A stretch of DNA of 64,000 nucleotides from Vitrella brassicaformis CCMP3155 (Eukaryota > Protista > Chromerida). The position numbers were made by a program, and so were the translations under genes. The notes under the pieces are model-generated. The model was not told the origin of the DNA and did not search any database. It worked only from the letters and a program-made list of their open reading frames with translations. Below, in pieces: positions 28,341 through 42,705 of this stretch (position 1 is its first letter; the number at the start of each line of letters is the position of its first letter). The stretch is from the NCBI GenBank assembly GCA_001179505.1, contig CDMY01000510.1, forward strand, positions 124,001 to 188,000, given 5' to 3'.

Positions 28341-31010
28341 ATGGCGTCGCCAACTCGCGGCATGCACGGGCTGGCCCGCCTTCCGTCAGATCTCTGGTTG
28401 CTCAACCTCTCCGGCGCTCTCACCGACGAGGAGACCATGCGACTGTCTGTCCTGGACGAGAACTGCTTCCAGACCATCTGCCTGTCCACCCTCGTCATCG
28501 GCCCGGCCGTCCCTCGGCTTCGTCGCGTCCTTCTGTGCTCCCGTGGCCCGCAGAAGATCATTCTCGTGGTCGCCAAGGGCGAGAACAGCCTTGCGACGGA
28601 TGTGCTGCAGTTCTTCGTCGACGCAATGATGCAGCACAGTGACAAGATCAAGACCATCAAGTCGGTCCGGTCATTCGACAAGGGTGGGGAGTACTGGGAC
28701 GCTGGGAGGACGGGCCTGCGGGGCGCGCCGCGGACGTTTCCGGCACTCACCGACACCGAGGTGGGGTTCGTGCCTGTTGTCAAGGCATTCCGCCAATTCG
28801 ACTGGAAGACACCCAGCCTTACGACACTCAAGGCCAGGGCGCGCAGTGAGTGTCAGCCACTGCTGGATCTGACGGATTTTCACCGGCTTGGCGGCTTCCA
28901 ACAGTCGCTGAGCCACCTGCTGGCCCACTCGCCCCTCATCCGCCACGTTGACGTATTCCCTCTGTCCACACTCGTCTGCGGCACGGCACTCGACACACAC
29001 GCAGCCAGTCTGGAGGCGGTGGGCGACATGGTCTTCATCACACACGATCAGGAGATGGAGGGGCTCGTGACAGACCTGCCGCGCGTCCAGCCGCTGGCCA
29101 CAAGGAAGCGCATCGGCATCTTCGACCGGAACCTGGCCTTCGACTCGACCCTGCCGGCCTCGTTCGATTCATCCGGACGGACATCCCTGCGCCTACTGGT
29201 CGAACTGGGAAAGCGCGGTACGCACAGACATATCGTCGTACAAAAGAGAGAGGGGTGGACCATGATATGGCTGTGTTTTGTTGCTGCCTTGATGTCAGGT
29301 TACTGCGCGCTGCTGAAGCGGCGGGATGTCCAGCTCAAGGGAGCTCCTGAGCGTGCTGACAAGTGCCCCCCAGAGGTGGAGGGCTCCATCCGCGACATCG
29401 TCAAGCGAGGCATCTGCCAGGCCGATACCGTCGTGATGAGCTATGATGAACGGTCGCAGCCCTGGGATAATTCCTGGGACCTCACTGATTCGAGTGGCCG
29501 ACCGGTGGTGTTCGACAAGACCAAGTTCCTCATCATCAAGTGTGTCGACTCCAATCGCGGCTATGTCGGCCATGATGCGGTGAGTGAGGAACGAACATGG
29601 AACATCCATGTAAATCCCTCTCTCTCCCTCTCAACCCATGGATGTATCATGCATCTCTTTCTCTTCCTTGCTGTTCGATCTGTCTTGCAGATTGCGGGCT
29701 GGACGGCGGGCGGCTGGACGAGTGTCCAAGTGCTGACGCTGGACAGGGTCGAGTACATGAGCGTCAAAGACCATGTCTGCTGGCACAGGCATCGATTCAC
29801 AGAGGAGGGCATCTACGACAAAGATCCACCAGAGGACGGTCCTGCTGCTGCCGCTGCTGGTCAGGAGGAGGAGTTTCTTAATTCGGATGATGCGGATGAG
29901 TGGGATGAAACGGACGAGGTGGATGATGAGGATGATGAGGATGAGGATAAGGATGAAGATGACCCGCCCCACAACGGCGCTGACACCCACGAGGACGAGG
30001 AGGAGGACGAGGACGAGGTGGGCGAGCAGAGGAGCGACGAGAGCGGCGAGGGAGAGGACGAAGACATGGATGGCGACGAGATGGATGGTGAAGATGGGGG
30101 CGAGGGGGAGGGGAGTGAGGATCAAGGTGAGGAGCATGGCGTGCTGTCGGCTCCCCTGCAGCTGCTGCTCAGGACCATGCCGCCCACACTACACGCCGTC
30201 CGACTCATCAATGTCCCGTGGTAGGCGGCTGTGGTGGGCGCGTCGAGACACCTTGACACCTACGGGTACGTGTGTGTGTGTGTGTGTGTGTGATGCAGGT
30301 GGGCTGTATTCGATGCATTGGTATGTTTGTCTGAGGGCACTGCGGCTCAGCCAGGGGAGGGAGGCAACAAGCTTGTGTGTCTGGAGAAGTTAGAGATCGA
30401 GACAGAGGTGCAGGAGAGCCCCCTGGTGGTGCCTGAGAAGGGTGGCGCCTTGTGGAGTACCATGCAGGAGCGCCTCTCGGTCGGCCAGCTCACCATGCAC
30501 GTCAAGACAGAGGTGCGCTGCACTGCATCAGTCAATGCCACTTTCCTCTGCCATTCTTCTGTCTGTCCGCGACTTCAGTTCGACTATCCTTTGAACGAAG
30601 AAGTGCCTCCCTACTCGGCTGACCTCTTTTCTGTGTACTACGAGCTGATCCTTCTCCTGCAGCCCGACACTGTGGTACTCACCGTCAACACGTCGCGACG
30701 TGAGCAACGACCGAATAATGCACCCATGTATTCGCACACGGCCCCTGTGCTGCTGACTTCCGCAGATGCCAAGCAGGTGGTCTTCTGGAGCGATGACGGA
30801 GACGACATGAAGCCCGACGAGGCCAAGTATCCCTTCCTCAAGGGGCTCACCGGCGATATCCGCGCAAGGTACCGCATGTGCCACTGCGGTGCAAGGGGAG
30901 ACCACCCAGGCCACATGAACTGGACGGACAATCGGATGGATGTGGTGCTCAAGAGGCGCAGGCTGGGTGACCTCAGTGGCCTGGCGGCCGACAAGTGTGC
31001 CATGCAGTAG
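28341..31010 (+). CDS. F-box-like / lineage-expanded hypothetical protein with acidic D/E tract, multi-exon
   Basis: N-terminal LARLPSDLWLLNLSGALTDEETMRLSVL (F-box-like). A long GC3-rich frame with in-frame introns, a D/E-rich stretch at ~29870-30120, and downstream exons to 31010. Exon joins around 30224-30350 are uncertain. Confidence 0.6.
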
Positions 31011-31489: not shown

Positions 31490-34400
31490 TCAGTCGAGCA
31501 GCTTGTCACGCCACTCCATGACCTCATCAGAGTCGTCCCCGGCCCACGTGGGGTGCAGGTGCGTCATGTTGAACACCGACGCAACCACCTCTGACGCAGC
31601 GCGCACACCGCTGTGGGCCGCACCATGCACACACTGCGCGCCGAATGCGCTGGTCGCCTCGCCCGCAAAGAACACCTTGGACCGTTGTGAGTTGTCGTGG
31701 CTGAAGGGCTCTGGGCTGGAGAGGGCGACGTTGTCCTCGAGGGCGCGGCCGCCCTTCTTCCAGAAGGCATACGAGCCCAGGGAGAAGGGATCTGTGTCCC
31801 AGCGAGTCACCACCTGACACATGCACACACCCCGACAGACAGACAGACAGACAGACATGCATTAGGTCGGTTGAACCCACGGGGGGAGCGTGTGTGGTGT
31901 GGTGTGGTGTGGTGTGGTGGGATGGGTACCCATTGGATGGGCGGCTCGATGGTCTTGGCGATCCGCTCGCCGGCCGTCTCGCCGGCCTCGCCACACCGCG
32001 ACCGGGTAAACATGGCCCGCAGCACTCCCATGACCTCATCTAACACCTGTGCACAGACAGACAACCAAACCCCCACCCCACAGGGATGCATACCACACCA
32101 AACCACCACGACCCCACCCACGTGCGTGCGTGTGTGTGTGTGTGTGTCTGAAGTAAGTGCTGAGTGAGCTACCTGTTGGTCCGATTTGCCGTCCCATTTG
32201 TATGCGCCGAATGAGTGGGCCACGAGGATGTTTCTGCAATGGTCGGGGTCGAATGCGTGCAGATTCATGAACTGGAAAGCCTCCTGCGTCGTGTTGAAGA
32301 AACGAACGGTCGGCTGCCAAAAGCGACTGCATTCATTTCCACAGATATGATTGATGGACACACAACACAGAGTGGCTGGGATGGCTGATATGTGTGTGTT
32401 GCCTGCCTGCCTGTCTGTCTGTCTGTCTGCTGGGGTTGCGTACCGCTTGAACCTCATGCAGACTTTGTTGTGACAGCCTCCACCGAGAAACTGACGGACA
32501 GACAGGCCAACAGACACGAGAAGACAGGAGAGGGTCTCATGGTGTACTGTACTGAGTGCGGTGCGGCAGTGTGTGCGCGTACGTACCTTTATGGCGTCTC
32601 GCTTCTCCTGACTCAGCGGGGGGTCGAACTCGATACGGCTCTCGGTCGTGTTGTCCTCACGCAACACACCTGCACCACACACACACACACACACAACAAC
32701 AACAACCAGATCTGATCTTCTGTATGAGTCTTTCCTTCCTGTCTCGCTAACCGATGGGCACAGTGACGATGACCCCTAGCGCCCGGAGCGTGTGGCCGTC
32801 GGCCGTCTTGACCTCACACACATCAGCAACGTCCCCAGCTACATACCCATGACCAGACCCGCCCCACCCCNNNNNNNNNNNNNNNNNNNNNNNNNNNNNN
32901 NNNNNNNNNNNNNNNNNNNNNNNNNNNNNNNNNNNNNNNNNNNNNNNNNNNNNNNNNNNNNNNNNNNNNNNNNNNNNNNNNNNNNNNNNNNNNNNNNNNN
33001 NNNNNNNNNNNNNNNNNNNNNNNNNNNNNNNNNNNNNNNNNNNNNNNNNNNNNNNNNNNNNNNNNNNNNNNNNNNNNNNNNNNNNNNNNNNNNNNNNNNN
33101 NNNNNNNNNNNNNNNNNNNNNNNNNNNNNNNNNNNNNNNNNNNNNNNNNNNNNNNNNNNNNNNNNNNNNNACCCCTCCCTCGGCCCGCCACTGGCAGCCA
33201 CCACCATCTCTCCCTCTCCCTCTCCCCCCTCCCCCTCCTCCATCTTGACCTCTTGCAACGGCCCCTCCTCCGCTGCTGCTGCTGCCGCTGCTGCCGATGC
33301 CGCCGGTGTCTTCCTTCGTTTGGCCTTGCCGGACTCTGCAGCGGCCTCAAGAGACCGCTTCGTCGCCCCAGACGGCTCCCCGTCCTCCGCCTTGACAGCT
33401 TGGTCGGCCTCGCCACTGGCAGTGACCCTGCGCCTCCGGAGGAAGCGCCTGCCGCCGCGTGTGAAGACCTCCATGCGTTTCCTGTTCCAGTTCTCCGCCC
33501 CCTCAGTCCGGATGCGCTCCAGCTTCTTGGTGAGCAGCAGCATGCCCCACACACAGTTCTCGCCGGTGCGGCTCACATCGGCCTCCACGTAGTACTCGCC
33601 GCCATCTCCGTCAGGGAAGGGGCCAACCGTCACGGCCACCGTCTGCTTGCCGCGTAGAGCGGGGACGGCGAAGGACGCCTTCTCGCTGAGCCCGGCGTAG
33701 GCCTTCTTGTGCCGGTCTGACTGGGGGTTGCAGACGTCGCGGAAGGCCTGTCGGCAGCTGGCGAGGGCCGCGTCTGCCTCCTCCTGCGACACCAGCGGGG
33801 CTGAGGCGCTATCGTCATTATCCTCCTCTTCATCTTGGTCCTGCTGTCCTTCTGACGGCGATGCTTCTGGCTTGGCTGGTGAGGGATATCTGACCCTGGC
33901 CTCCGTGATGGCCGCGGTGAGAGCGTTGAAGTCCCAAGCGCGGCCGTCGGCGGCCTTCCGGTGCACAGTGGCCTCGACGAACCGGTCTTTCTCCTCCTCC
34001 CCCTCCCCCTGTCCCTCCTCACCGAAGGGCCCCACCCTGACGACCACGGCGTCCTTCTCCTTGGCGTGAGGGTCGTATGTGAAGGTGGCCTTCTTCATGA
34101 GGCCCTCATACACAGAATTGTAGAGGGGCTCCGACGGCCGGCAGCGGACGTTGTAGGCCTTGCGGCACGACTTGATGGCGAAGGAGGGAGAGTGCTCGAT
34201 GCTGGCCCGTTTCTTCTTGTTCTTGCTCTTTGGCTGTGGCGACCATGTGCTGTCGGTGGGCCGCTTCTCGCTGCTGCCGCTAGTGGCCATTTTCTTCTGC
34301 TTGTTGGTCTTGGAGGATGGCGACGGCTCGCGCCTCTCGACGAGAATGCGCTTGCCGTCTTCGTCCACGATGGCCACCGACGGCAAGTCCAGCAGCTTGG

Positions 34401-37400
34401 CCCCAAGCTTCCGCACGCGCCGCAGCTTGCCGATCAGGGTGCCCATCTGCCATGCCGTGGGGCCACTGGTGGCGCGATGGAAGGTCTCGCGGATGTAGAC
34501 CTGCCCGTCGCGGCCGTCAGGGAGGGGCCCGAGGGTGACAGTGATGGTCTCCTCGTGCTTGCTGTCGGTGCTGTGGACGAGGATTGCACCGTCCTTGAAC
34601 TCGGCGAGCAGGGGGCTCCTCTTGCAGGACTGGTCGAATGCCGCCCGGAACTCATTGATTACCTCGTCAATGGCCCGTCTGCGCGTCATCATGGGCGACC
34701 CAGTCGCTGCAGGGGGAGGGGTGGGTGGTGGGCGCTTGGCACGACCTTCGGCGCTCTTCTCGGCATCAGCAGACCTCAGTGACTCGCCCGACGCCGAGCA
34801 GTCTCTCGGAGCATCCCTGGCCACGTCGTGTGCACTGCCCCCGCGAGCCAATGCGCGTGCGCCGACGAGCGTGCGGCGGCCCTTCCTGTTGACGAACCGC
34901 CAGGTCCAGCCCTCCTCGGGCGCCACGCCGTTGAAGCCCACTGCACGCGAGACCTTCTTGGCCAGCGGCATCCACACCCACCGTCGCTGCACCTCATCCC
35001 CGAGAAACGGCACCCTCGCCCACACTTCGGCGTATACGTAGTACTCGCCGCCCCTGCCGTCGGGGAAGGGGCCCACCGTCACCTCCACGGCCTCGTGGTA
35101 GCCGCTCTCGGGGCTGTGGGCAAAGGCGGCCTTGTCCGCAAGGCCATGGAAGGGGCTGTCGCTTGAGGCTGCCTGGCACATCTCGCGGTAGGCCTCCTGG
35201 CACAGACGCTCCAGCACTGCGGAAGGGCTCTCGTGTGGCCCCTTCGCATCAGCTGCAGCTGCAACAGCGGCCGCGGCTGGTTTCTCCTCCTTATGATCTG
35301 CCATGCCGTCGTCACCAGCGTCGCCGCCAGGTGGGGCGTCGGGTACCTCCTCGGGTGCGTCGGGTGGGCCCATCAGCTCGGCCGTGGGGCCGATCTTGGC
35401 AGCCAGAACGGTCTGGAAGGGGGCTGGCGCAGCTGCCGCAGCTGGCTCCTCTCTCTTGTCATCCGACGCGGCAGCCAGTGGTGGCGATGGAGCAGCTCGG
35501 GCGGCGCCGATCTTGTCCCTCTCGGCCTCGCCGTCCTCCCTGCCACCGCCCACCAGCGGGCTAGTGGGTGCGTCGGGGTACACTGGGGTCCTGGGCTGCG
35601 ATTCTGGATGGCTGCCGCCGCTGCCCCTCTCGCTCGACTGGCCGCCATCCTGCCGCTTGTGCCTGCCGGCCCTCAGCGTGTTGACGAACTTAATGATCTG
35701 CCCGTTCTCGTGAGGTGGCGGCGCACGGGGCGGCGTGTTCGTCGACACGACGTAAGGGGGCCGCGGGGAAGGGCTAAATAAAACGCCAGCACCACCACTA
35801 CCACCACCACCACCACCACCAGCAGCAGCGGCCGGGGCAGCCTCCTGTCGGGTGCCTGGGTGGTCCTTGTCCTTGTCCTTGTCCTTGTCCTTGTCTGTCT
35901 GCCTGTCTTCGCGCGGTGTGCGGTCCTTCCTCTTGCCGTTCATCTTCTTGATCTGGGAGAGCTTGTCACTGTCACGGCCGAACAGGGGCGTCTTCTTCTT
36001 GGGAGTCTGGGGCCGAGACGCCTCCCCCTCCCTCCTCTCTCCCGCCTCGGCCCCCAACTGGCCGTTGCCACCACCACTGCCGTCGCCAGCGGTCTCTTTT
36101 GGGGGCTGCTGCTGCGGCTGCTGCTGTTGTTGTGGGACAAGCAGGGGCAGAGCAGATGGCATGGCGTCCAGTGATTGTGAGGGGCGCGGCGGCGGCGGTG
36201 GGCGGGACGGCGATAGCCGTGAGCTCTCTAGCACGCCCAGTGAGGCCGCGCGCTTCCGCCCCGGGTGGTCGCGGTCGACGGATTTGCCCGGGTCGTGGAT
36301 GGGTGGGCCGGGATCGGCAACACGCGCCAGGCCGGCAAAAGCCCGCAGAGGGGGCAGGGCTGCCTCGGGCGCCCCGTCTGACGTGCCGGCACGCCTCTCG
36401 TCGTCTGTCTTGTCACTGGGTGGCTTGACGTCGTCTGCTGGGTGCATGTGGGCGTCCTCGGTGGTGGGCGGACCAGGGGCCGCGGCAGCCATCGGCTCAT
36501 CGGCTGCTGGGGGCGGGTGTTGTGGTGGGGCCGGCATGATCTCGTCATCGCCGCCCGTCTGGCCGACGTCGCCTTCATCAGCAGGGGGCATGGGGGCATC
36601 TGGGGCTGCCAACGGCTCATCGACGGGAGACGCGATGGGCGCGTCATCCCTCTCCCTCGACACAGGGGCGTCGATTTCCATGTCTCCTGCAGCAGCGGCA
36701 GCAGCTGGCTCCGGTGCTGCTGGTGGCTCTTCGATCAGAGGAGGGATGACTGCAGGCTGAGCAGCAGCCGCAGCAGCTGCAGCTGCAGCTGCTGGTGGTG
36801 GTGCTGCAGTAATGGCTACTCGCTGGACCACCTGAGAAGACAGAGAATGGAGACGTCGGGTGCATGCCATGCAGCCCAACCCCCTCCAAAAGGCCTGCAC
36901 GCGTTACGACGTACCGATCTGAAGCGGATGCATGGCAGCAGATCAAACTTCTTGACCAGATGGTTCGGGAACCACTCGTAACCCTAAAAGATACACGCAA
37001 CACACATGTGTGACACACATAGGTCGAGGGATGAACGTAATGTCAAGACGTGTCCGTGTGTGGTCGATCGATCGCATACATATGCGTTGAGTCGGTCTCC
37101 GGGGTTGTACGGGAGCCACGCGGTGCCGTGTGTCCACAGGAGATGCTGCTGCGACGGCGTGGGCAGGGGCTGCGACCGCACGCTCTCCTCGAACGTCTTG
37201 ACCCGCGCGTCGTATGTCTGCCCGGCACTGAGGAGACACAAACCATACAATTAGACACAAATCATTAGAGCATGTGGCTTCGCTTACAGTCTGTAAGTCT
37301 TGGTGATGAGAGACTTTGATCGGTTATCCGCTCCCACCCTGCCGCCACTGGGGGCGCTGTCACTCTTCCCTTGATGAAGGGAGGCCACAGGTGGGCCAGC

Positions 37401-39788
37401 CGGAGCCGCCTTGGTGTAGATGGGCACGTCAAGGGAGCGCTGGGGGTCGATCTCGTCCAGCCTGCAGACGTAGCCATGGGTCCGCTGGGCCATCTTGAGG
37501 ACCATGTTGCGGTCCACCTCTGTCAAGGGCTGCGGATACACGTCAAATATGTAGCTGTTGACACACATGTGACCCACACACAACACACAACACACGAACC
37601 AATGCTGGTATGCTGTCTGTGTGTTTGTATGTGTTGATGGAGGGTTACCTGAGTGCGGCTTCGAGTGTCTGTCTGAAGCTGTTGAGTCGCCTGGCTTTGG
37701 CGAAGAGCTGGAGCGGTGGATTGGGCGTCTCCCACCACTTGAAGGGGATGGTCTGGGTCTCCTTCTTGACGTGGCGGCTGCGGTGGGGCAGCACCGACTC
37801 CTCCAAGACAGACTGCAGGCATGAATGCATCAAACAATCGCAAAGGGAAAAACACGATGCCCATTCATTCTTCCTCCTCCTGTGTGCGGATGGTACCTTT
37901 CTGATGTTGTCCAGGTAGCTGGCGGCAGCCTGTGTGCGGGCCGCCTCGTCCTGGATGGGCAGGTCGTCGTCATCCTCAAGCTGATACTGACATGTCAAAC
38001 ATACACACACGGGCATACACACAGAGACTCCAGTCCAGCCAGCCACGGATGTGTGTGTGTGTGTGTGTGGATGGGCGAGGCGCACTACTACCGAGTAGAT
38101 GTGTGCCATGAGGTGGAAGGCAGCGTCCATGAGGTCGTGTGCCCGCAGCACCCGCCACTGCTGAATCCGCTTGCCCGTCGTGTGGTCGAACCAACGCGCG
38201 CTCTGCATCGGCTCCCAGTTGCCGTCTGCTTGCAGCAAGACATACACGCACACGATTGATTGCTTGTATGCTCTTCTGTCTGTCTGTCTGTCTGTCTGGG
38301 TGTGTCTGTATGGTACCGAATGATGGCGCCGTGGGTATGCCCTCCTGGACGGCGGCCTGCCACACGTACTGCTGCTCGTCGGGCTCCCACACCAGCCAGT
38401 TCGCCCCCAAATCAACCTGACACCACACAACACACAGCACACTCGCCACACGTGTCGATGATGCTGGATGGATGTGCTGATTGGTTGTCTGGCGGTCGGG
38501 TGGGTGGGTGGGTGGTATACCTTGGCCTCGTCCAGCCCCTCAACGGCAGGAAAGGTGTGAGTCAGCACACGACCACCGTACCTACAAACCCACACACGTA
38601 CATCAAAGACAAGGAAGCGACAAGAATGACACACAGTGGGGAAAATGTGCATCCCTCGCAAGCTGACCTCTCCCTGGCCTCGAGGATGAGCACCGAGAAG
38701 CCCCGCTTCCTCAGCTGAGCAGCCGCACTCAGCCCCGCCACTCCAGCACCAACAATTATCACATGATGGTCCACACCATCAGGCAGACGCGGCGGCTCAA
38801 ACGCACTGTTGTGTCCAGGATGGGGCGGCCTCGGTCCCTTCACTCGTGGCTTGTTCCACTTGTGAACGATCTCCTTGGGCGCGGGGCGAAAGTCACTGGC
38901 AGGGATGGGCAGCGGGCCGCCCTGCCGTGTGCGATCATAGTGGATGAGGAATGACATGTGCTCGTCGGGCTGCTCCCGATGGGCCATGAAGTCGTCTTCC
39001 TGGTAACCCACGTCGGGAATCCTCCGTGCCGAGTCAGCCCCGCCCCTCGGCGACCGCATGCCGCCCTCCTCACCGGCACCACCCCTCCCCTCTCTCCTCC
39101 TCATGCCCTTGACGCTCCGGTCGGTCTTGTTGAGCCATCTGTCGAGCAACTCCTCCTCGCTCTCGTCGCTGCCGTGGTCGCTGAAGTAGGGAGGGGCGTC
39201 GGATGGGACGTCCAGGTCCGATGGCAGGTCGTCCTCCTCTGACGGGGAGGGGGAGGGGGAATTGGGGGCGAGGGGCGGGAGGAGGGCGTCAAGGTCGTCA
39301 AGGTCGTCAAGGACGTCGGGCAGGGCAGCCGCAGCAGCTGCGCTAGACGCCTCACCTAATGATCAATAAAAACACAGACAGAGAGACAGACAGACAGACA
39401 GGATATCCTCAGACCCACACACCACACCCCCTCCAGTAGTCTATCTAATCTATCGCCCATTCCAATGATTCCCACCTGCGTCGGTGTGGTCAGGGAATAT
39501 GGCCATGGCTCTGTGCACCTCCAGCTCGTCCCACACGAGCTGCTCCATGTGGTCCAGGAACCGATCATAGTTGTCCAGCTGCTTCGAGTGCCGCATCCTC
39601 TCAATCGCCTCCTCGCCGCCCCGAGGCGTCCCATCGGCACCTGCCAGCCACTTCCGATAGGTCTCGTCAAGGGTCTCCCCCGGCACCAGGGGGTTCCGCT
39701 GTGCCCCGTTGGGAGCGATAGATGGGTCTGGCTGATGAATGCCGCTGTCCTCGGCCTCCATACGGTCCATCTCGTCCATCTCATCCAT
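31490..39788 (-). CDS. Flavin-dependent amine oxidase (LSD1/KDM1 or polyamine oxidase family) with a giant internal insertion, multi-exon
   Basis: HVIIVGAGVAGLSAAAQLRKRGFSVLILEAR (FAD dinucleotide fold), GGRVLT, VDLGANW, CEVKTADG..VIVTVPI|GVL, IEFDPPLS, GCHNKVCMRF (conserved Lys), TRWDTDPFSLGSY and VFFAGEATS..CVHGAAHSGVRAA. No SWIRM domain recognised. Interrupted by an N-gap. Confidence 0.85.
32871..33170. other. Assembly gap (300 N)
   Basis: Run of N inside the amine oxidase insertion exon. Confidence 1.
33428..35220 (-). repeat. Four copies of an unrecognised ~100-aa protein domain within the amine oxidase insertion
   Basis: Copies at ~34862-35220, ~34330-34676, ~33895-34190 and ~33428-33782 share C..A[YF]...C, L..KA.F, V.V.[VL]GP[FL]PDG.[GD]G, Y[VI].[AE].[VF].R, and W...L..K motifs. 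Confidence 0.8.
35863..35895. repeat. (GTCCTT)n hexamer repeat encoding a (KD)n tract on the minus strand
   Basis: Five tandem GTCCTT units; translation DKDKDKDKDKD. Confidence 0.85.
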
Positions 39789-40082
39789 CCTCGCGGCTGG
39801 CGTCAACGATCTCACAAGGGGGAGGAGGGCGAGGGGAGGGAGTGGTCCGTCGATAAGCTGCGGCTTGTGCTGTGCTCACAGGGTCAGATGCGGCCTCTCA
39901 CGCGGCCCTGCCTATGGATAGACACAAACTGACGTCAGCAAGTGCCGTTTCTCTCTGAATTCATTGCTCTCAAAACTCCGTCGGGTGCTGCGTGCTACGG
40001 AAGACCAAGAATACCGAGAGGATGCCGCGAATCGTTTGCGAGCCACATGGCATTGCGAGCTTGGGGAAGAAAAGGGAACGAA

Positions 40083-42705
40083 ATGGCTTCCCCTGTTAGT
40101 CCCATCTCCCTCCCTCCCTATCCCCAGCCGCACGTGGCCAAGACCACGCCCTCGTCCTCACGCGACGCCGCGAGCCACCACTTGATGTCATACTCTGATC
40201 TGGAGCACGTCCGCACACTCGCAGACGGATGGCAACGTTCTCTCGATGTGAGTAGGCAGGCCACGGGAGAGAGAGGGCGGCAAGAGGGATCACCGAGAAA
40301 CTCATGCGGATTTGCTTGCCTGGTTGTTTGTTTGTTTGTGTCAGACGTGCATCGAGTACTGGGAGGCGGGTCTGCAGGAGGAGGCGGGCCAGATGCTCTC
40401 CAAGACCAAACAGGAGATGGACTTGTTCTTCGTAAGCACCCAAACACACACACACACAACACACCACACAAGAGTGAGCACCTGTTGCTGTTGTGCGTTA
40501 ATTGCGCAGGAGGAGGTGACGAAAGCGACACCGTGGGAGCACGTGTCGACCCCCAAGAGCGGCGTCATCATCGAGGACGCCTCCGAAGACAAGACCATCC
40601 GCGAGTCCAACACCTGCCGATACATTCTCAACCTATGCCCCATGCCACAAGCGGCAGACGGGCGACGCCGTCCCAGGGGCGGCAAGGGCCCACGGGCGAT
40701 GCACCCGGTCTTCCAGGACGAGGCGCTCGTGGACATCCTCAGTGCCCTCTGCCAGCGGCTCAATGCTTGCCCCGTCCTCGCAGAGATCCGCCTTGCGGAA
40801 CAGGCAGACGAGGAGATGCTCCTGGAGGAGGCCAAGGCAGGCGTGCGCAACGAGGAGACCCCCGAGACCGCCGACACGCCGTCCCAATCCTTTGTGGCCG
40901 ATGGGGCGGGCGGGCCGCCATCGCCGCAGCTTGACCCCTTTGGATGGGATCACCGGATGTGCGAGGCGGAGAGCGAGGCAGAGGAGTTCCGGGAAGGCGG
41001 CTTCCGGCTGATTCGGCCGATCCGCGGGTGCGACGAGGACAGGGAGCGTCGTGAGGGGTTGGAGGATCTGGAGCGGCTGATCGGCGAGGTGGAGTGGCTG
41101 CTCGAGGCGGAGCAGGTGACGCTGGCCTACAAGCGGCTGCAGGCCCTCAAGCGGCGGACCGTCGAGCACCTCAAGAAAACGGGCGGCGGCACACCCACCC
41201 CCTCTTACACCTTCCTCTCGACGAGCCATAGCCAGCCGCCCTCGCCCACCCTGTCATACGGCCATGACGGATCCCCACAGCACAGCCCCACCCACCACGG
41301 CAGCACGCGACGGCGAAGGCCCAACCTGCGGTCGCAGCTGGAGCGGCTGGGCGTGGCAGGGGCGCACAGGAAAGTGCTGGACGAGAACACTGTCAAGAGG
41401 CTCAACTACCGGATGGCCCGCATCGAGGGGGTCAACGAGCTCATGATGGCCTCGCCAACCGACCAGGCTTGGCGGGCCGTCTCCCACGACGCATACGACT
41501 TCAGGTGAGCAAGAGAGAGAGGAGAGGAGAAGACACATCGATGACAGGGATGGGATGGATGTGCCTGCTGGGCGTCCGTCCACTCTGTGTGTATGTTGGG
41601 TATGTATGTTGCAGATGGCGTTTTGACGAGGACGGGACGGCGATAATGATGATTGAGGGTGTGCTCAACTCGGACCTGTTTTCGATCATGTGTCTCATCT
41701 ACGAGTGCGACTACCACAACAAGTGGCTGCCATTCCTCACCGAATCGTCCACCTACCACATAGTCGGACGCCTGCAACAAATCGTGGTCCACGGGTCAGT
41801 GAGCCAGCCAGGCCACACAGACACACGCACACCCACCCCCTCCAGTAGCGACCTGCCTGCCTGCCTGGCTGCTTGCCTCAATCAGATATGCGCTGCCGTG
41901 GCCGTTCGAGCCGCGTGAGGCCGTGGCTTATGGGTTTGGCACAAACGCGCTGGAGGACCCCGACTTCCACTGCGTCATGGTGGTGGCGTGGAGCGTGCCC
42001 AACGAAAAGACCTACTGGGACGCACCGGTGCCTGGCGCGAGGGACGGCGTCATCAGAATGAATGTGTAAGCCCTTAAGGCACGACAAGGAAGGCAGTGAA
42101 GTGAGTGAGCATTGCACCTCCACGCCTCCCTCCTCGTGTGTGTGGGTGTTCAGTGAGCATTTTGCGTACTACTTTTACCCCGAGAGTGAGAAGTCGACTC
42201 GCATGAAGGTACTGCTCAAGATCGACCCCAAGATCGCATTCGTCCCACTGTGGTAAGTGTGGGCAGACACACACAGACACACAGACAGACACACAGAGAG
42301 GGTCAGAGAGCAGACTGAGACGCGCCAGACCTCTCTGTCTGGTTTGTGTGGCTGTATGTGTGTGCAGGTTGCAGAACTACATAGCCCGCTTCATCTGCCA
42401 GTGGATGTTCAGAAACATCCTCAAGTACGTGGCCGCGCGCAGAGAGGCTTCCAGGAACACATACGCGCCCACATGTGTGTCTCTGTGTGTCTTTTTTGTG
42501 TGCCTCTGTGTCTTTTTCCCTGTCTGCTATATATAGGTGCATCAAGAACTTCAAGGGCAGCGTGTGGGAGAAGCGGATGAAGGAGCGGCCAGAGGTGTAC
42601 GAGTGGATCAGGCGGGAGGTGCAGAAGTTCTACGAGAGCGACACATTCAAACAGAGGAAATGTGCGGCAGCCAGCACAGACACCAAGGGCAAAGGGGGCA
42701 GGTAG
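40083..42705 (+). CDS. START/SRPBCC-like lipid-binding domain protein with long N-terminal extension, multi-exon
   Basis: Spliced C-terminal half reads IEGVLNSDLFSIMCLIYECDYHNKWLPF...YALPWPFEPRE.V.YGFG...DPKIAFVPLW|LQNYIARFI, as in START-fold proteins. Ends GGR* at 42705. Confidence 0.7.

What the first reader, a model, noticed from the sequence alone, without database searches (positions are those of the whole stretch)
33428..35220. Four tandem copies of an unrecognised ~100-aa globular domain inside a flavin amine oxidase
Within an otherwise low-complexity insertion are four alignable modules: R1 RLCQEAYREMC..FHGLADKAAF..AVEVTVGPFPDGRGGEYYVYAEVWAR..WVWMPLAKKVSR; R2 EFRAAFDQSC..TITVTLGPLPDGRDGQVYIRETFHR..AWQMGTLIGKLRRVR; R3 SCRKAYNVRC..YEGLMKKATF..AVVVRVGPFGEEG..RFVEATVHR..AWDFNALTAAITEAR; R4 SCRQAFRDVC..YAGLSEKASF..TVAVTVGPFPDGDGGEYYVEADVSR..VWGMLLLTKKLERIR. 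The pattern suggests helix, three strands, helix, with basic NLS-like linkers (KKQK, KSKNKKKR, RRRR). I do not recognise the family. If the enzyme is an LSD1-type demethylase that lacks SWIRM, these modules could be a lineage-specific chromatin or nucleic-acid targeting system; this is inference.
Basis: partly seen in the sequence, partly recalled or inferred. Interest (0 to 1): 0.85.

Follow-up and report, generated by a model that had tools for sequence, protein, structure and literature searches.

The report
Orphan repeat domain inside amine oxidase
In the alga Vitrella brassicaformis, a free-living relative of malaria parasites, an expressed flavin amine oxidase carries four copies of a small protein domain that matches no known family or solved structure, looped out of the enzyme and probably serving to target it, though neither the enzyme's substrate nor what the domain binds is known.

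Summary
The repeats are real: four ~105-120-aa copies (minus strand, 35232-33439), 26-35% identical, pairwise z 10-25. They lie in one large exon of an annotated 2131-aa Vitrella brassicaformis gene (CDMY01000510.1) whose other exons form a divergent flavin amine oxidase with its FAD motifs and the equivalents of LSD1's catalytic Lys and Tyr. The ~1200-aa insert sits at a beta-turn of the FAD subdomain, not at the LSD1 Tower site. No SWIRM was detected. Spliced contigs show expression; nothing spans a 300-N assembly gap after repeat 4. The domain has no Pfam or PDB sequence match. It recurs in 11 other proteins, all Vitrella where named, one with an AP2-shaped domain. AlphaFold models of two copies are confident (pLDDT 89, 92) and share one topology: helix, short helix, three strands, helix, hairpin. 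Best structural Z is 4.7-5.3, with weak dsRBD-like rows and no AP2. Best reading: a multivalent targeting array on a nuclear oxidase; ligand and demethylase activity are untested. The scan very probably noted this domain before at other Vitrella loci; its insertion in an oxidase is what is new here.

The parts
31490..39788 (-). Whole gene: divergent flavin amine oxidase with a large insert; annotated as one 2131-aa product
   Evidence: NCBI gene call at L012 13150-21448 = window 31490-39788, with Amino_oxidase hits; locus identical to the window
39476..39788 (-). First exon; acidic N-terminal extension, no Pfam hit (no SWIRM)
38668..39355 (-). Exon ending in the FAD-binding GxGxxG motif
   Evidence: Pfam NAD_binding_8 E 1e-8; oxidase profile positions 20-52
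36915..38581 (-). Eight small exons of the N-terminal oxidase half (GGR and DLGANW motifs; the last carries the GY..L..K.D motif)
   Evidence: GT-AG boundaries; three joints seen in spliced contigs; profile positions 55-76 and about 217-231
33171..36831 (-). Large exon (1220 aa up to the gap): 533 aa of low-complexity sequence, four modules, acidic tail
   Evidence: acceptor at 36831 confirmed by a joint; open frame
34867..35232 (-). Module R1
34342..34680 (-). Module R2 (model pLDDT 91.5, pTM 0.81)
34198..34341 (-). Basic linker (net +10 in 48 aa) with KSKNKKKR, NLS-like
   Evidence: the NLS role is inference
33889..34197 (-). Module R3 (lacks the C-terminal hairpin by alignment)
33439..33786 (-). 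Module R4 (model pLDDT 89.1, pTM 0.81)
32871..33170 (.). 300-N assembly gap between the insert and the C-terminal oxidase half; true length unknown
   Evidence: also N in the NCBI record; 300-N runs in other loci of this assembly; no contig spans it
32752..32870 (-). Oxidase resumes (strand before VIVTVP), in a different frame from the one before the gap
   Evidence: profile positions 246-267; exonic in a spliced contig up to the gap edge
32444..32669 (-). Two exons including the NK motif lysine, equivalent by motif to LSD1 Lys661
   Evidence: profile positions 273-305; role of Lys661 from PMC3184146; the equivalence rests on the motif
31490..32326 (-). Last three exons, including GSY (aromatic-cage Tyr by motif), FAGEAT and VHGA motifs, and the stop
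   Evidence: Pfam Amino_oxidase E 5e-11; PDB LSD2/FMS1/LSD1; spliced contigs

Best explanation
The modules belong to a Vitrella-restricted alpha/beta domain family that this lineage reuses in regulator-like proteins. Here four copies were inserted, on a long disordered tether, into a surface beta-turn of the FAD-binding subdomain of a flavin amine oxidase, leaving the catalytic core able to fold. They most likely work as a multivalent targeting array that brings a nuclear oxidase to its site, doing the job that SWIRM and Tower do for LSD1. The likeliest ligand is nucleic acid, contacted through the conserved basic and aromatic residues of strand 3, helix 2 and the last strand. Shown: the repeats, their family, the predicted fold, expression, the insertion site and the catalytic motifs. 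Inferred: nuclear location, ligand, targeting role and a methyl-lysine substrate.
For: The family has 23 further copies in 11 proteins, Vitrella where named, and more at the same loci. One carrier, CEM39533, holds an AP2-shaped domain (TM 0.62 and 0.60 to AP2-bearing clusters). Three carriers share a C-terminal helical domain that looks SAM-like (best Pfam E 0.045). The best-conserved positions include Arg75 (basic in 96%), Trp82 (100%), Lys90 (73%), Arg95 (64%) and Arg116 (22 of 22). Nucleic-acid-binding dsRBD-like folds (HPF/pY, TARBP2) recur among the weak structural rows. A strongly basic linker lies between R2 and R3. Oxidase exons map in order on a bacterial oxidase profile on both sides of the insert. 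Unchecked scan notes report other Vitrella oxidases fused to AP2-type domains.
Against: Module net charge averages +0.5, which is unusual for a nucleic-acid binder. The dsRBD KKxA motif is absent from all 26 copies. Structural Z of 5.3 or less is background. The SAM assignment is below threshold. The oxidase cannot be assigned to LSD1 rather than polyamine oxidase. It keeps Trp in DLGANW like bacterial oxidases, where LSD1 has a smaller residue (my own knowledge). No read or contig spans the gap. There are no binding or localisation data.
Confidence: 0.4

Rival explanations
1. The modules are protein-binding adaptors. They bind each other or a shared partner and so link the oxidase to the AP2-shaped and SAM-like carriers of the same domain, building a Vitrella-specific regulatory complex much as the Tower recruits CoREST to LSD1.
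For: Neutral net charge; presence beside a separate AP2-shaped domain, which could supply DNA binding by itself; small proteins made of little but the module (182 and 212 aa); no nucleic-acid-binding signature.
Against: The most conserved polar residues are Arg and Lys. There is no PB1-type acidic motif in the window's copies and no ubiquitin-like or PB1 row in the structural searches.
Confidence: 0.3
2. The enzyme is an ordinary small-amine (polyamine-type) oxidase, or is inactive, and the array is a tolerated passenger in a permissive loop with no coupling to catalysis.
For: FMS1 polyamine oxidase scores as well as LSD1 and LSD2; no SWIRM; bacterial-type DLGANW; Vitrella proteins often carry long inserts.
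Against: Four copies at 26-35% identity all keep the family's core and two give confident models, which implies long selection; the repeats have high GC3.
Confidence: 0.2
3. The module is a very divergent member of the dsRBD-like fold with an added hairpin, and binds structured RNA. It is then a new family but not a new fold.
For: Same alpha-beta-beta-beta-alpha core; HPF/pY 3tqm Z 4.4 and 4.7 over 74-79 residues; TARBP2 dsRBD Z 3.4 over 69 of 75 residues.
Against: rmsd 3.0-4.0 and Z tied with unrelated folds such as signal peptidase complex (Z 5.3) and cystatin-like proteins; signature residues absent; no Foldseek hit at E 1e-3 or better. This reading overlaps with the best explanation.
Confidence: 0.15
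4. The repeat exon and the C-terminal oxidase half belong to two genes joined only by gene prediction across the assembly gap.
For: No contig spans 32871-33170, the frames differ across it, and contig depth is higher on the 3' side.
Against: The two halves complement each other without overlap (profile positions 20-231, then 246-452). The 3' spliced contig is exonic right up to the gap and the 5' frame is open to its edge. The 300-N run is a fixed placeholder, so the frame offset means nothing. Either half alone could not bind FAD.
Confidence: 0.06

Closest known systems
LSD1/LSD2 (KDM1) histone demethylases
   Same: Flavin amine oxidase core with the catalytic Lys and aromatic-cage Tyr motifs; accessory modules and a large insertion in the oxidase domain (PMC3184146); the last exon's best PDB hit is LSD2, E 3.5e-6.
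   Different: No SWIRM detected. The insert is ~1200 aa at a beta-turn of the FAD subdomain, not a two-helix Tower. The modules are unrelated to known LSD accessory domains. Activity is untested.
Polyamine oxidases (yeast FMS1, maize PAO) and bacterial flavin amine oxidases
   Same: Same fold family and motifs; FMS1 E 2.5e-5; exons map in order on a bacterial oxidase profile.
   Different: The bacterial relatives fetched are 389-528 aa and have no insert at this turn; this protein is 2131 aa or more with four folded modules and a basic NLS-like linker.
dsRBD-like fold (dsRBM, HPF/pY, RF-1 hydrolase domain)
   Same: Helix, three-strand meander, helix in the same order; recurring weak structural rows.
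   Different: Z 3.4-4.7 only; extra short helix and C-terminal hairpin; GPF lies between strands 2 and 3 instead of GPxH between strands 1 and 2; no KKxA motif.
AP2/ApiAP2 DNA-binding domain
   Same: Three strands followed by a helix; expanded in chromerids (PMC4501334); one carrier of the module also has an AP2-shaped domain.
   Different: No profile similarity (hhalign probability 0.6%), no AP2 row in the top 50 structural matches, and twice the length.

Membership tests
Flavin amine oxidase (PF01593) | FAD-binding GxGxxG, GGR, and C-terminal FAGE / HGA motifs in order | tested here: met
Flavin amine oxidase (PF01593) | Conserved active-site Lys and aromatic-cage Tyr | tested here: met
   NK and GSY align to the profile; equivalence to Lys661/Tyr761 (PMC3184146) rests on the motif
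LSD1/KDM1 demethylase | N-terminal SWIRM domain | tested here: not met
   no Pfam hit in exons 1-2 ahead of GxGxxG or in the annotated product; a very divergent SWIRM split over two exons is not excluded
LSD1/KDM1 demethylase | Helical Tower insertion in the oxidase domain | tested here: not met
   insert lies between profile positions about 231-240 and 246 and is alpha/beta plus low complexity; Tower position from my own knowledge
LSD1/KDM1 demethylase | Oxidase sequence groups with KDM1 rather than PAO | tested here: inconclusive
   LSD2 30.6, FMS1 27.9, LSD1 25.3 bits on the last exon; other exons too divergent
LSD1/KDM1 demethylase | Demethylates histone methyl-lysine | not testable with these tools
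   needs an assay
dsRBD | alpha-beta-beta-beta-alpha fold at significant structural similarity | tested here: inconclusive
   Z 3.4-4.7, background level
dsRBD | GPxH loop and KKxA motif; Pfam dsrm hit | tested here: not met
   KKxA 0 of 26, GPxH 1 of 26; no Pfam hit
AP2/ApiAP2 | AP2 profile or structural match | tested here: not met
PB1 / ubiquitin-like | beta-grasp fold and acidic OPCA motif | tested here: not met
   no such row in the top 50; motif in 1 of 26 copies
Ribosomal eL28 | Sequence or fold match | tested here: not met
   E 0.46 with 4 sequences vanished with 26; not in the structural rows
MBD / WRKY | Profile or structural match | tested here: not met
   no Pfam hit; not among the listed structural rows; a match under Z 3.2 would not be listed

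The most novel reading that the evidence does not exclude
A SWIRM-less, self-targeting histone or protein demethylase that finds its sites with an array of a new nucleic-acid-binding fold unique to Vitrella, one of several Vitrella oxidases that replaced partner proteins with built-in targeting domains.
Probability: 0.15. Interest if true: 0.85.

Novelty: new variant of a known kind. Interest (0 to 1): 0.55.

Why it matters
The domain is an undescribed, confidently modelled family without a clear solved relative, so it is a candidate new fold or new binding module. Its capture by an amine oxidase at an unusual loop gives the family its first link to an enzyme and so a concrete assay. If the enzyme is a demethylase, it would show how relatives of apicomplexan parasites can aim a chromatin enzyme without SWIRM, Tower or CoREST. 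The reach is limited because the family was found only in Vitrella.

Tried and rejected
Pfam on the single copies, the whole exon and all 26 family members: nothing significant. PDB sequence search: a weak eL28 hit disappeared with the deeper profile. Word-index protein searches with the modules found nothing; these are limited by length and shared words, and one search also missed this gene's own 2131-aa product, so the blanks are weak. Metagenome and viral contig scans with R4 found nothing (close relatives only). Foldseek against PDB and BFVD gave no E at or below 1e-3; the ESM Atlas gave a best TM of 0.50 and only sub-0.9 feature scores. Four of the 14 HMM hits (P0004, P0005, P0011, P0014) were rejected as sums of weak matches to threonine/valine-rich Ig-like repeats. 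PB1, AP2 and eL28 readings were rejected (see membership tests). SAM identity of the carriers' C-termini could not be confirmed. The AP2-like look of segments in CEL99614 and CEM30101 was not confirmed. A tree of 26 copies is unresolved, so the order of duplication cannot be read. Paper searches found no description of the domain or the gene.
Full report
Source and gene. The window is Vitrella brassicaformis CCMP3155: the locus fetched through the neighbouring protein is identical to the window and comes from contig CDMY01000510.1. NCBI calls one minus-strand gene at window 31490-39788 with a 2131-aa product and Amino_oxidase hits. That matches the ends of the exon model I read from the sequence: about 950 aa of small exons plus one large exon of 1220 aa up to an assembly gap. 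I searched the model only exon by exon, by reference; the joined search was left out.

The observation. The four quoted modules lie in the large exon. Pairwise alignment scores are 71-143 against shuffle maxima of 43-63, identities are 26-35%, and there is no fifth copy in the window. GC3 is 0.87-0.88 in the modules and about 0.7 in the flanks. The linkers are 62, 48 and 34 aa; the middle one is basic (net +10) and holds KSKNKKKR.

Expression and continuity. Runs X1 and X3 have no recorded type, but their contigs skip GT-AG introns, so they derive from transcripts. In both, one unbroken contig covers 33307-35779, that is all four modules. Another joins the 5' part of the large exon to the upstream oxidase exons, with a break of about 85 bases at a low-complexity stretch (35780-35862) where the genome is contiguous and the frame open. 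A third covers the C-terminal exons and, in X3, reaches the gap edge at 32870. Nothing spans the 300 N. The run is also N in NCBI, and 300-N runs occur at other loci of this assembly, so it is a placeholder and the frame offset across it carries no information. One gene is very likely but not shown.

Where the insert sits. Against a profile of five bacterial and archaeal oxidases fetched here, the exons map in order: 20-52, 55-63, 69-76, then after the insert 246-267, 273-290, 292-305 and 384-452 (the short exons score weakly on their own). The last exon before the insert aligns with the GY..L motif at about 217-231, and the large exon opens with residues that fit the next strand. The insert therefore replaces the turn between two strands of the FAD-binding subdomain. 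By my own knowledge this is well after the LSD1 Tower site. LSD1 is defined by SWIRM, oxidase and Tower, with Lys661 and Tyr761 central to catalysis (PMC3184146). The Lys and Tyr motifs are present; SWIRM was not detected. The last exon matches LSD2, FMS1 and LSD1 at 30.6, 27.9 and 25.3 bits, which does not separate demethylase from polyamine oxidase.

The domain family. A profile of the four copies, run against 1.84 billion representatives, returned 14 proteins. Ten are true: nine annotated Vitrella proteins and one MMETSP transcript product whose organism is not given; an eleventh carrier came from a cluster listing. They hold 23 further copies, some partial, and their loci hold more. None of the nine carriers scanned whole has a Pfam domain. 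CEM39533 also has an AP2-shaped segment. Three carriers end in a shared helical domain that looks SAM-like but stays below threshold. The window's copies are no closer to each other than to copies in other genes, and the tree is unresolved. R1-R3 align in one piece with three consecutive copies of CEM39532 (E 1e-22), which hints that an array was captured whole; that is a hint only. The family was not seen outside Vitrella, but the one exhaustive search used only a four-sequence profile.

Structure. With the 26-copy alignment, AlphaFold2 gave R4 pLDDT 89.1 and R2 91.5, both pTM 0.81, and the same order of elements: long helix, short helix, three strands, helix, beta-hairpin. The two models share one alignment, so they are not independent, and I could not superimpose them. 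Foldseek found nothing at E 1e-3 in PDB or BFVD. VIA-align over 48,161 chains gave best Z 4.7 and 5.3, below the 7-8 that is typical for models without a clear match. The ESM Atlas gave TM 0.50 at best. The recurring rows are dsRBD-like proteins (HPF/pY, TARBP2, release-factor domains), cystatin-like folds and chimallin; none stands out. AP2 is not supported by profile or shape. A weak match does not prove a new fold.

How it most likely works. A long disordered loop leaves the FAD subdomain and carries four folded modules and a basic, NLS-like linker, so the oxidase core can fold while the array reaches elsewhere. The best-conserved polar positions are Arg75, Lys90, Arg95 and Arg116, next to an invariant Trp82, and one other carrier has an AP2-shaped domain. 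I therefore favour a targeting array that binds nucleic acid for a nuclear oxidase (0.40). Protein binding (0.30) is nearly as likely because the modules are neutral overall. A passenger insert in a small-amine oxidase (0.20) and a two-gene artefact (0.06) follow.

Earlier notes and literature. Two notes of this scan describe what is very probably the same domain at other Vitrella loci (s1-242733, s1-201635). Three describe other Vitrella oxidases fused to AP2-type modules (s1-215902, s1-221679, s1-242753); I did not test those. They are leads, not support. No paper found describes this domain or gene; the chromerid genome paper documents ApiAP2 expansion but has no occurrence of 'demethylase' or 'chromatin' in its main text (PMC4501334).

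Verdict. The feature is real and the domain undescribed. The system is best filed as a new variant of a known kind, an amine oxidase with accessory modules, in which the modules are an orphan, apparently species-restricted domain at an unusual insertion site. Interest 0.55.

Noticed in passing
window 28341-31010 (+): The neighbouring 755-aa gene belongs to a family of four Vitrella proteins (56-92% identity to the query region) with no Pfam domain; three lie on contigs of the same length, probably one.
   Followed up: partly
window 37080-37450 (-): About 100 further residues lie between the helix-like DR..LK motif and the GY..L motif, probably a second, smaller insertion in the oxidase; judged by eye from the exon translations.
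   Followed up: no
window 39788-40083: The oxidase gene and the next annotated gene start head to head, about 295 bases apart, which suggests a shared promoter.
   Followed up: no
L008 1108-10860: Three nearly identical small genes (CEM29677, CEM29682, CEM29684) carry paired copies of the module, so the family is still duplicating.
   Followed up: partly
L009 192-1716: An MMETSP transcript has the module and a SAM-like C-terminal domain in different frames, so the listed 231-aa product is probably cut short by a frameshift.
   Followed up: partly
L010 7474-14477: A 182-aa single-module gene lies next to a gene with a weak PHD hit and is followed by further whole and fragmented copies.
   Followed up: no
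window 33333-36492, run X10: A 2025 marine sediment metagenome holds this gene. Contigs over 34184-34742 and 35070-35664 have no differences, while one over linker 36278-36492 has 9 in 215 bases; depth is low and strains may differ.
   Followed up: partly
P0006 (CEL99614), P0007 (CEM30101): Both carriers have several short segments of three strands and a helix that look AP2-like by eye, and two helical C-terminal domains; neither was confirmed.
   Followed up: partly
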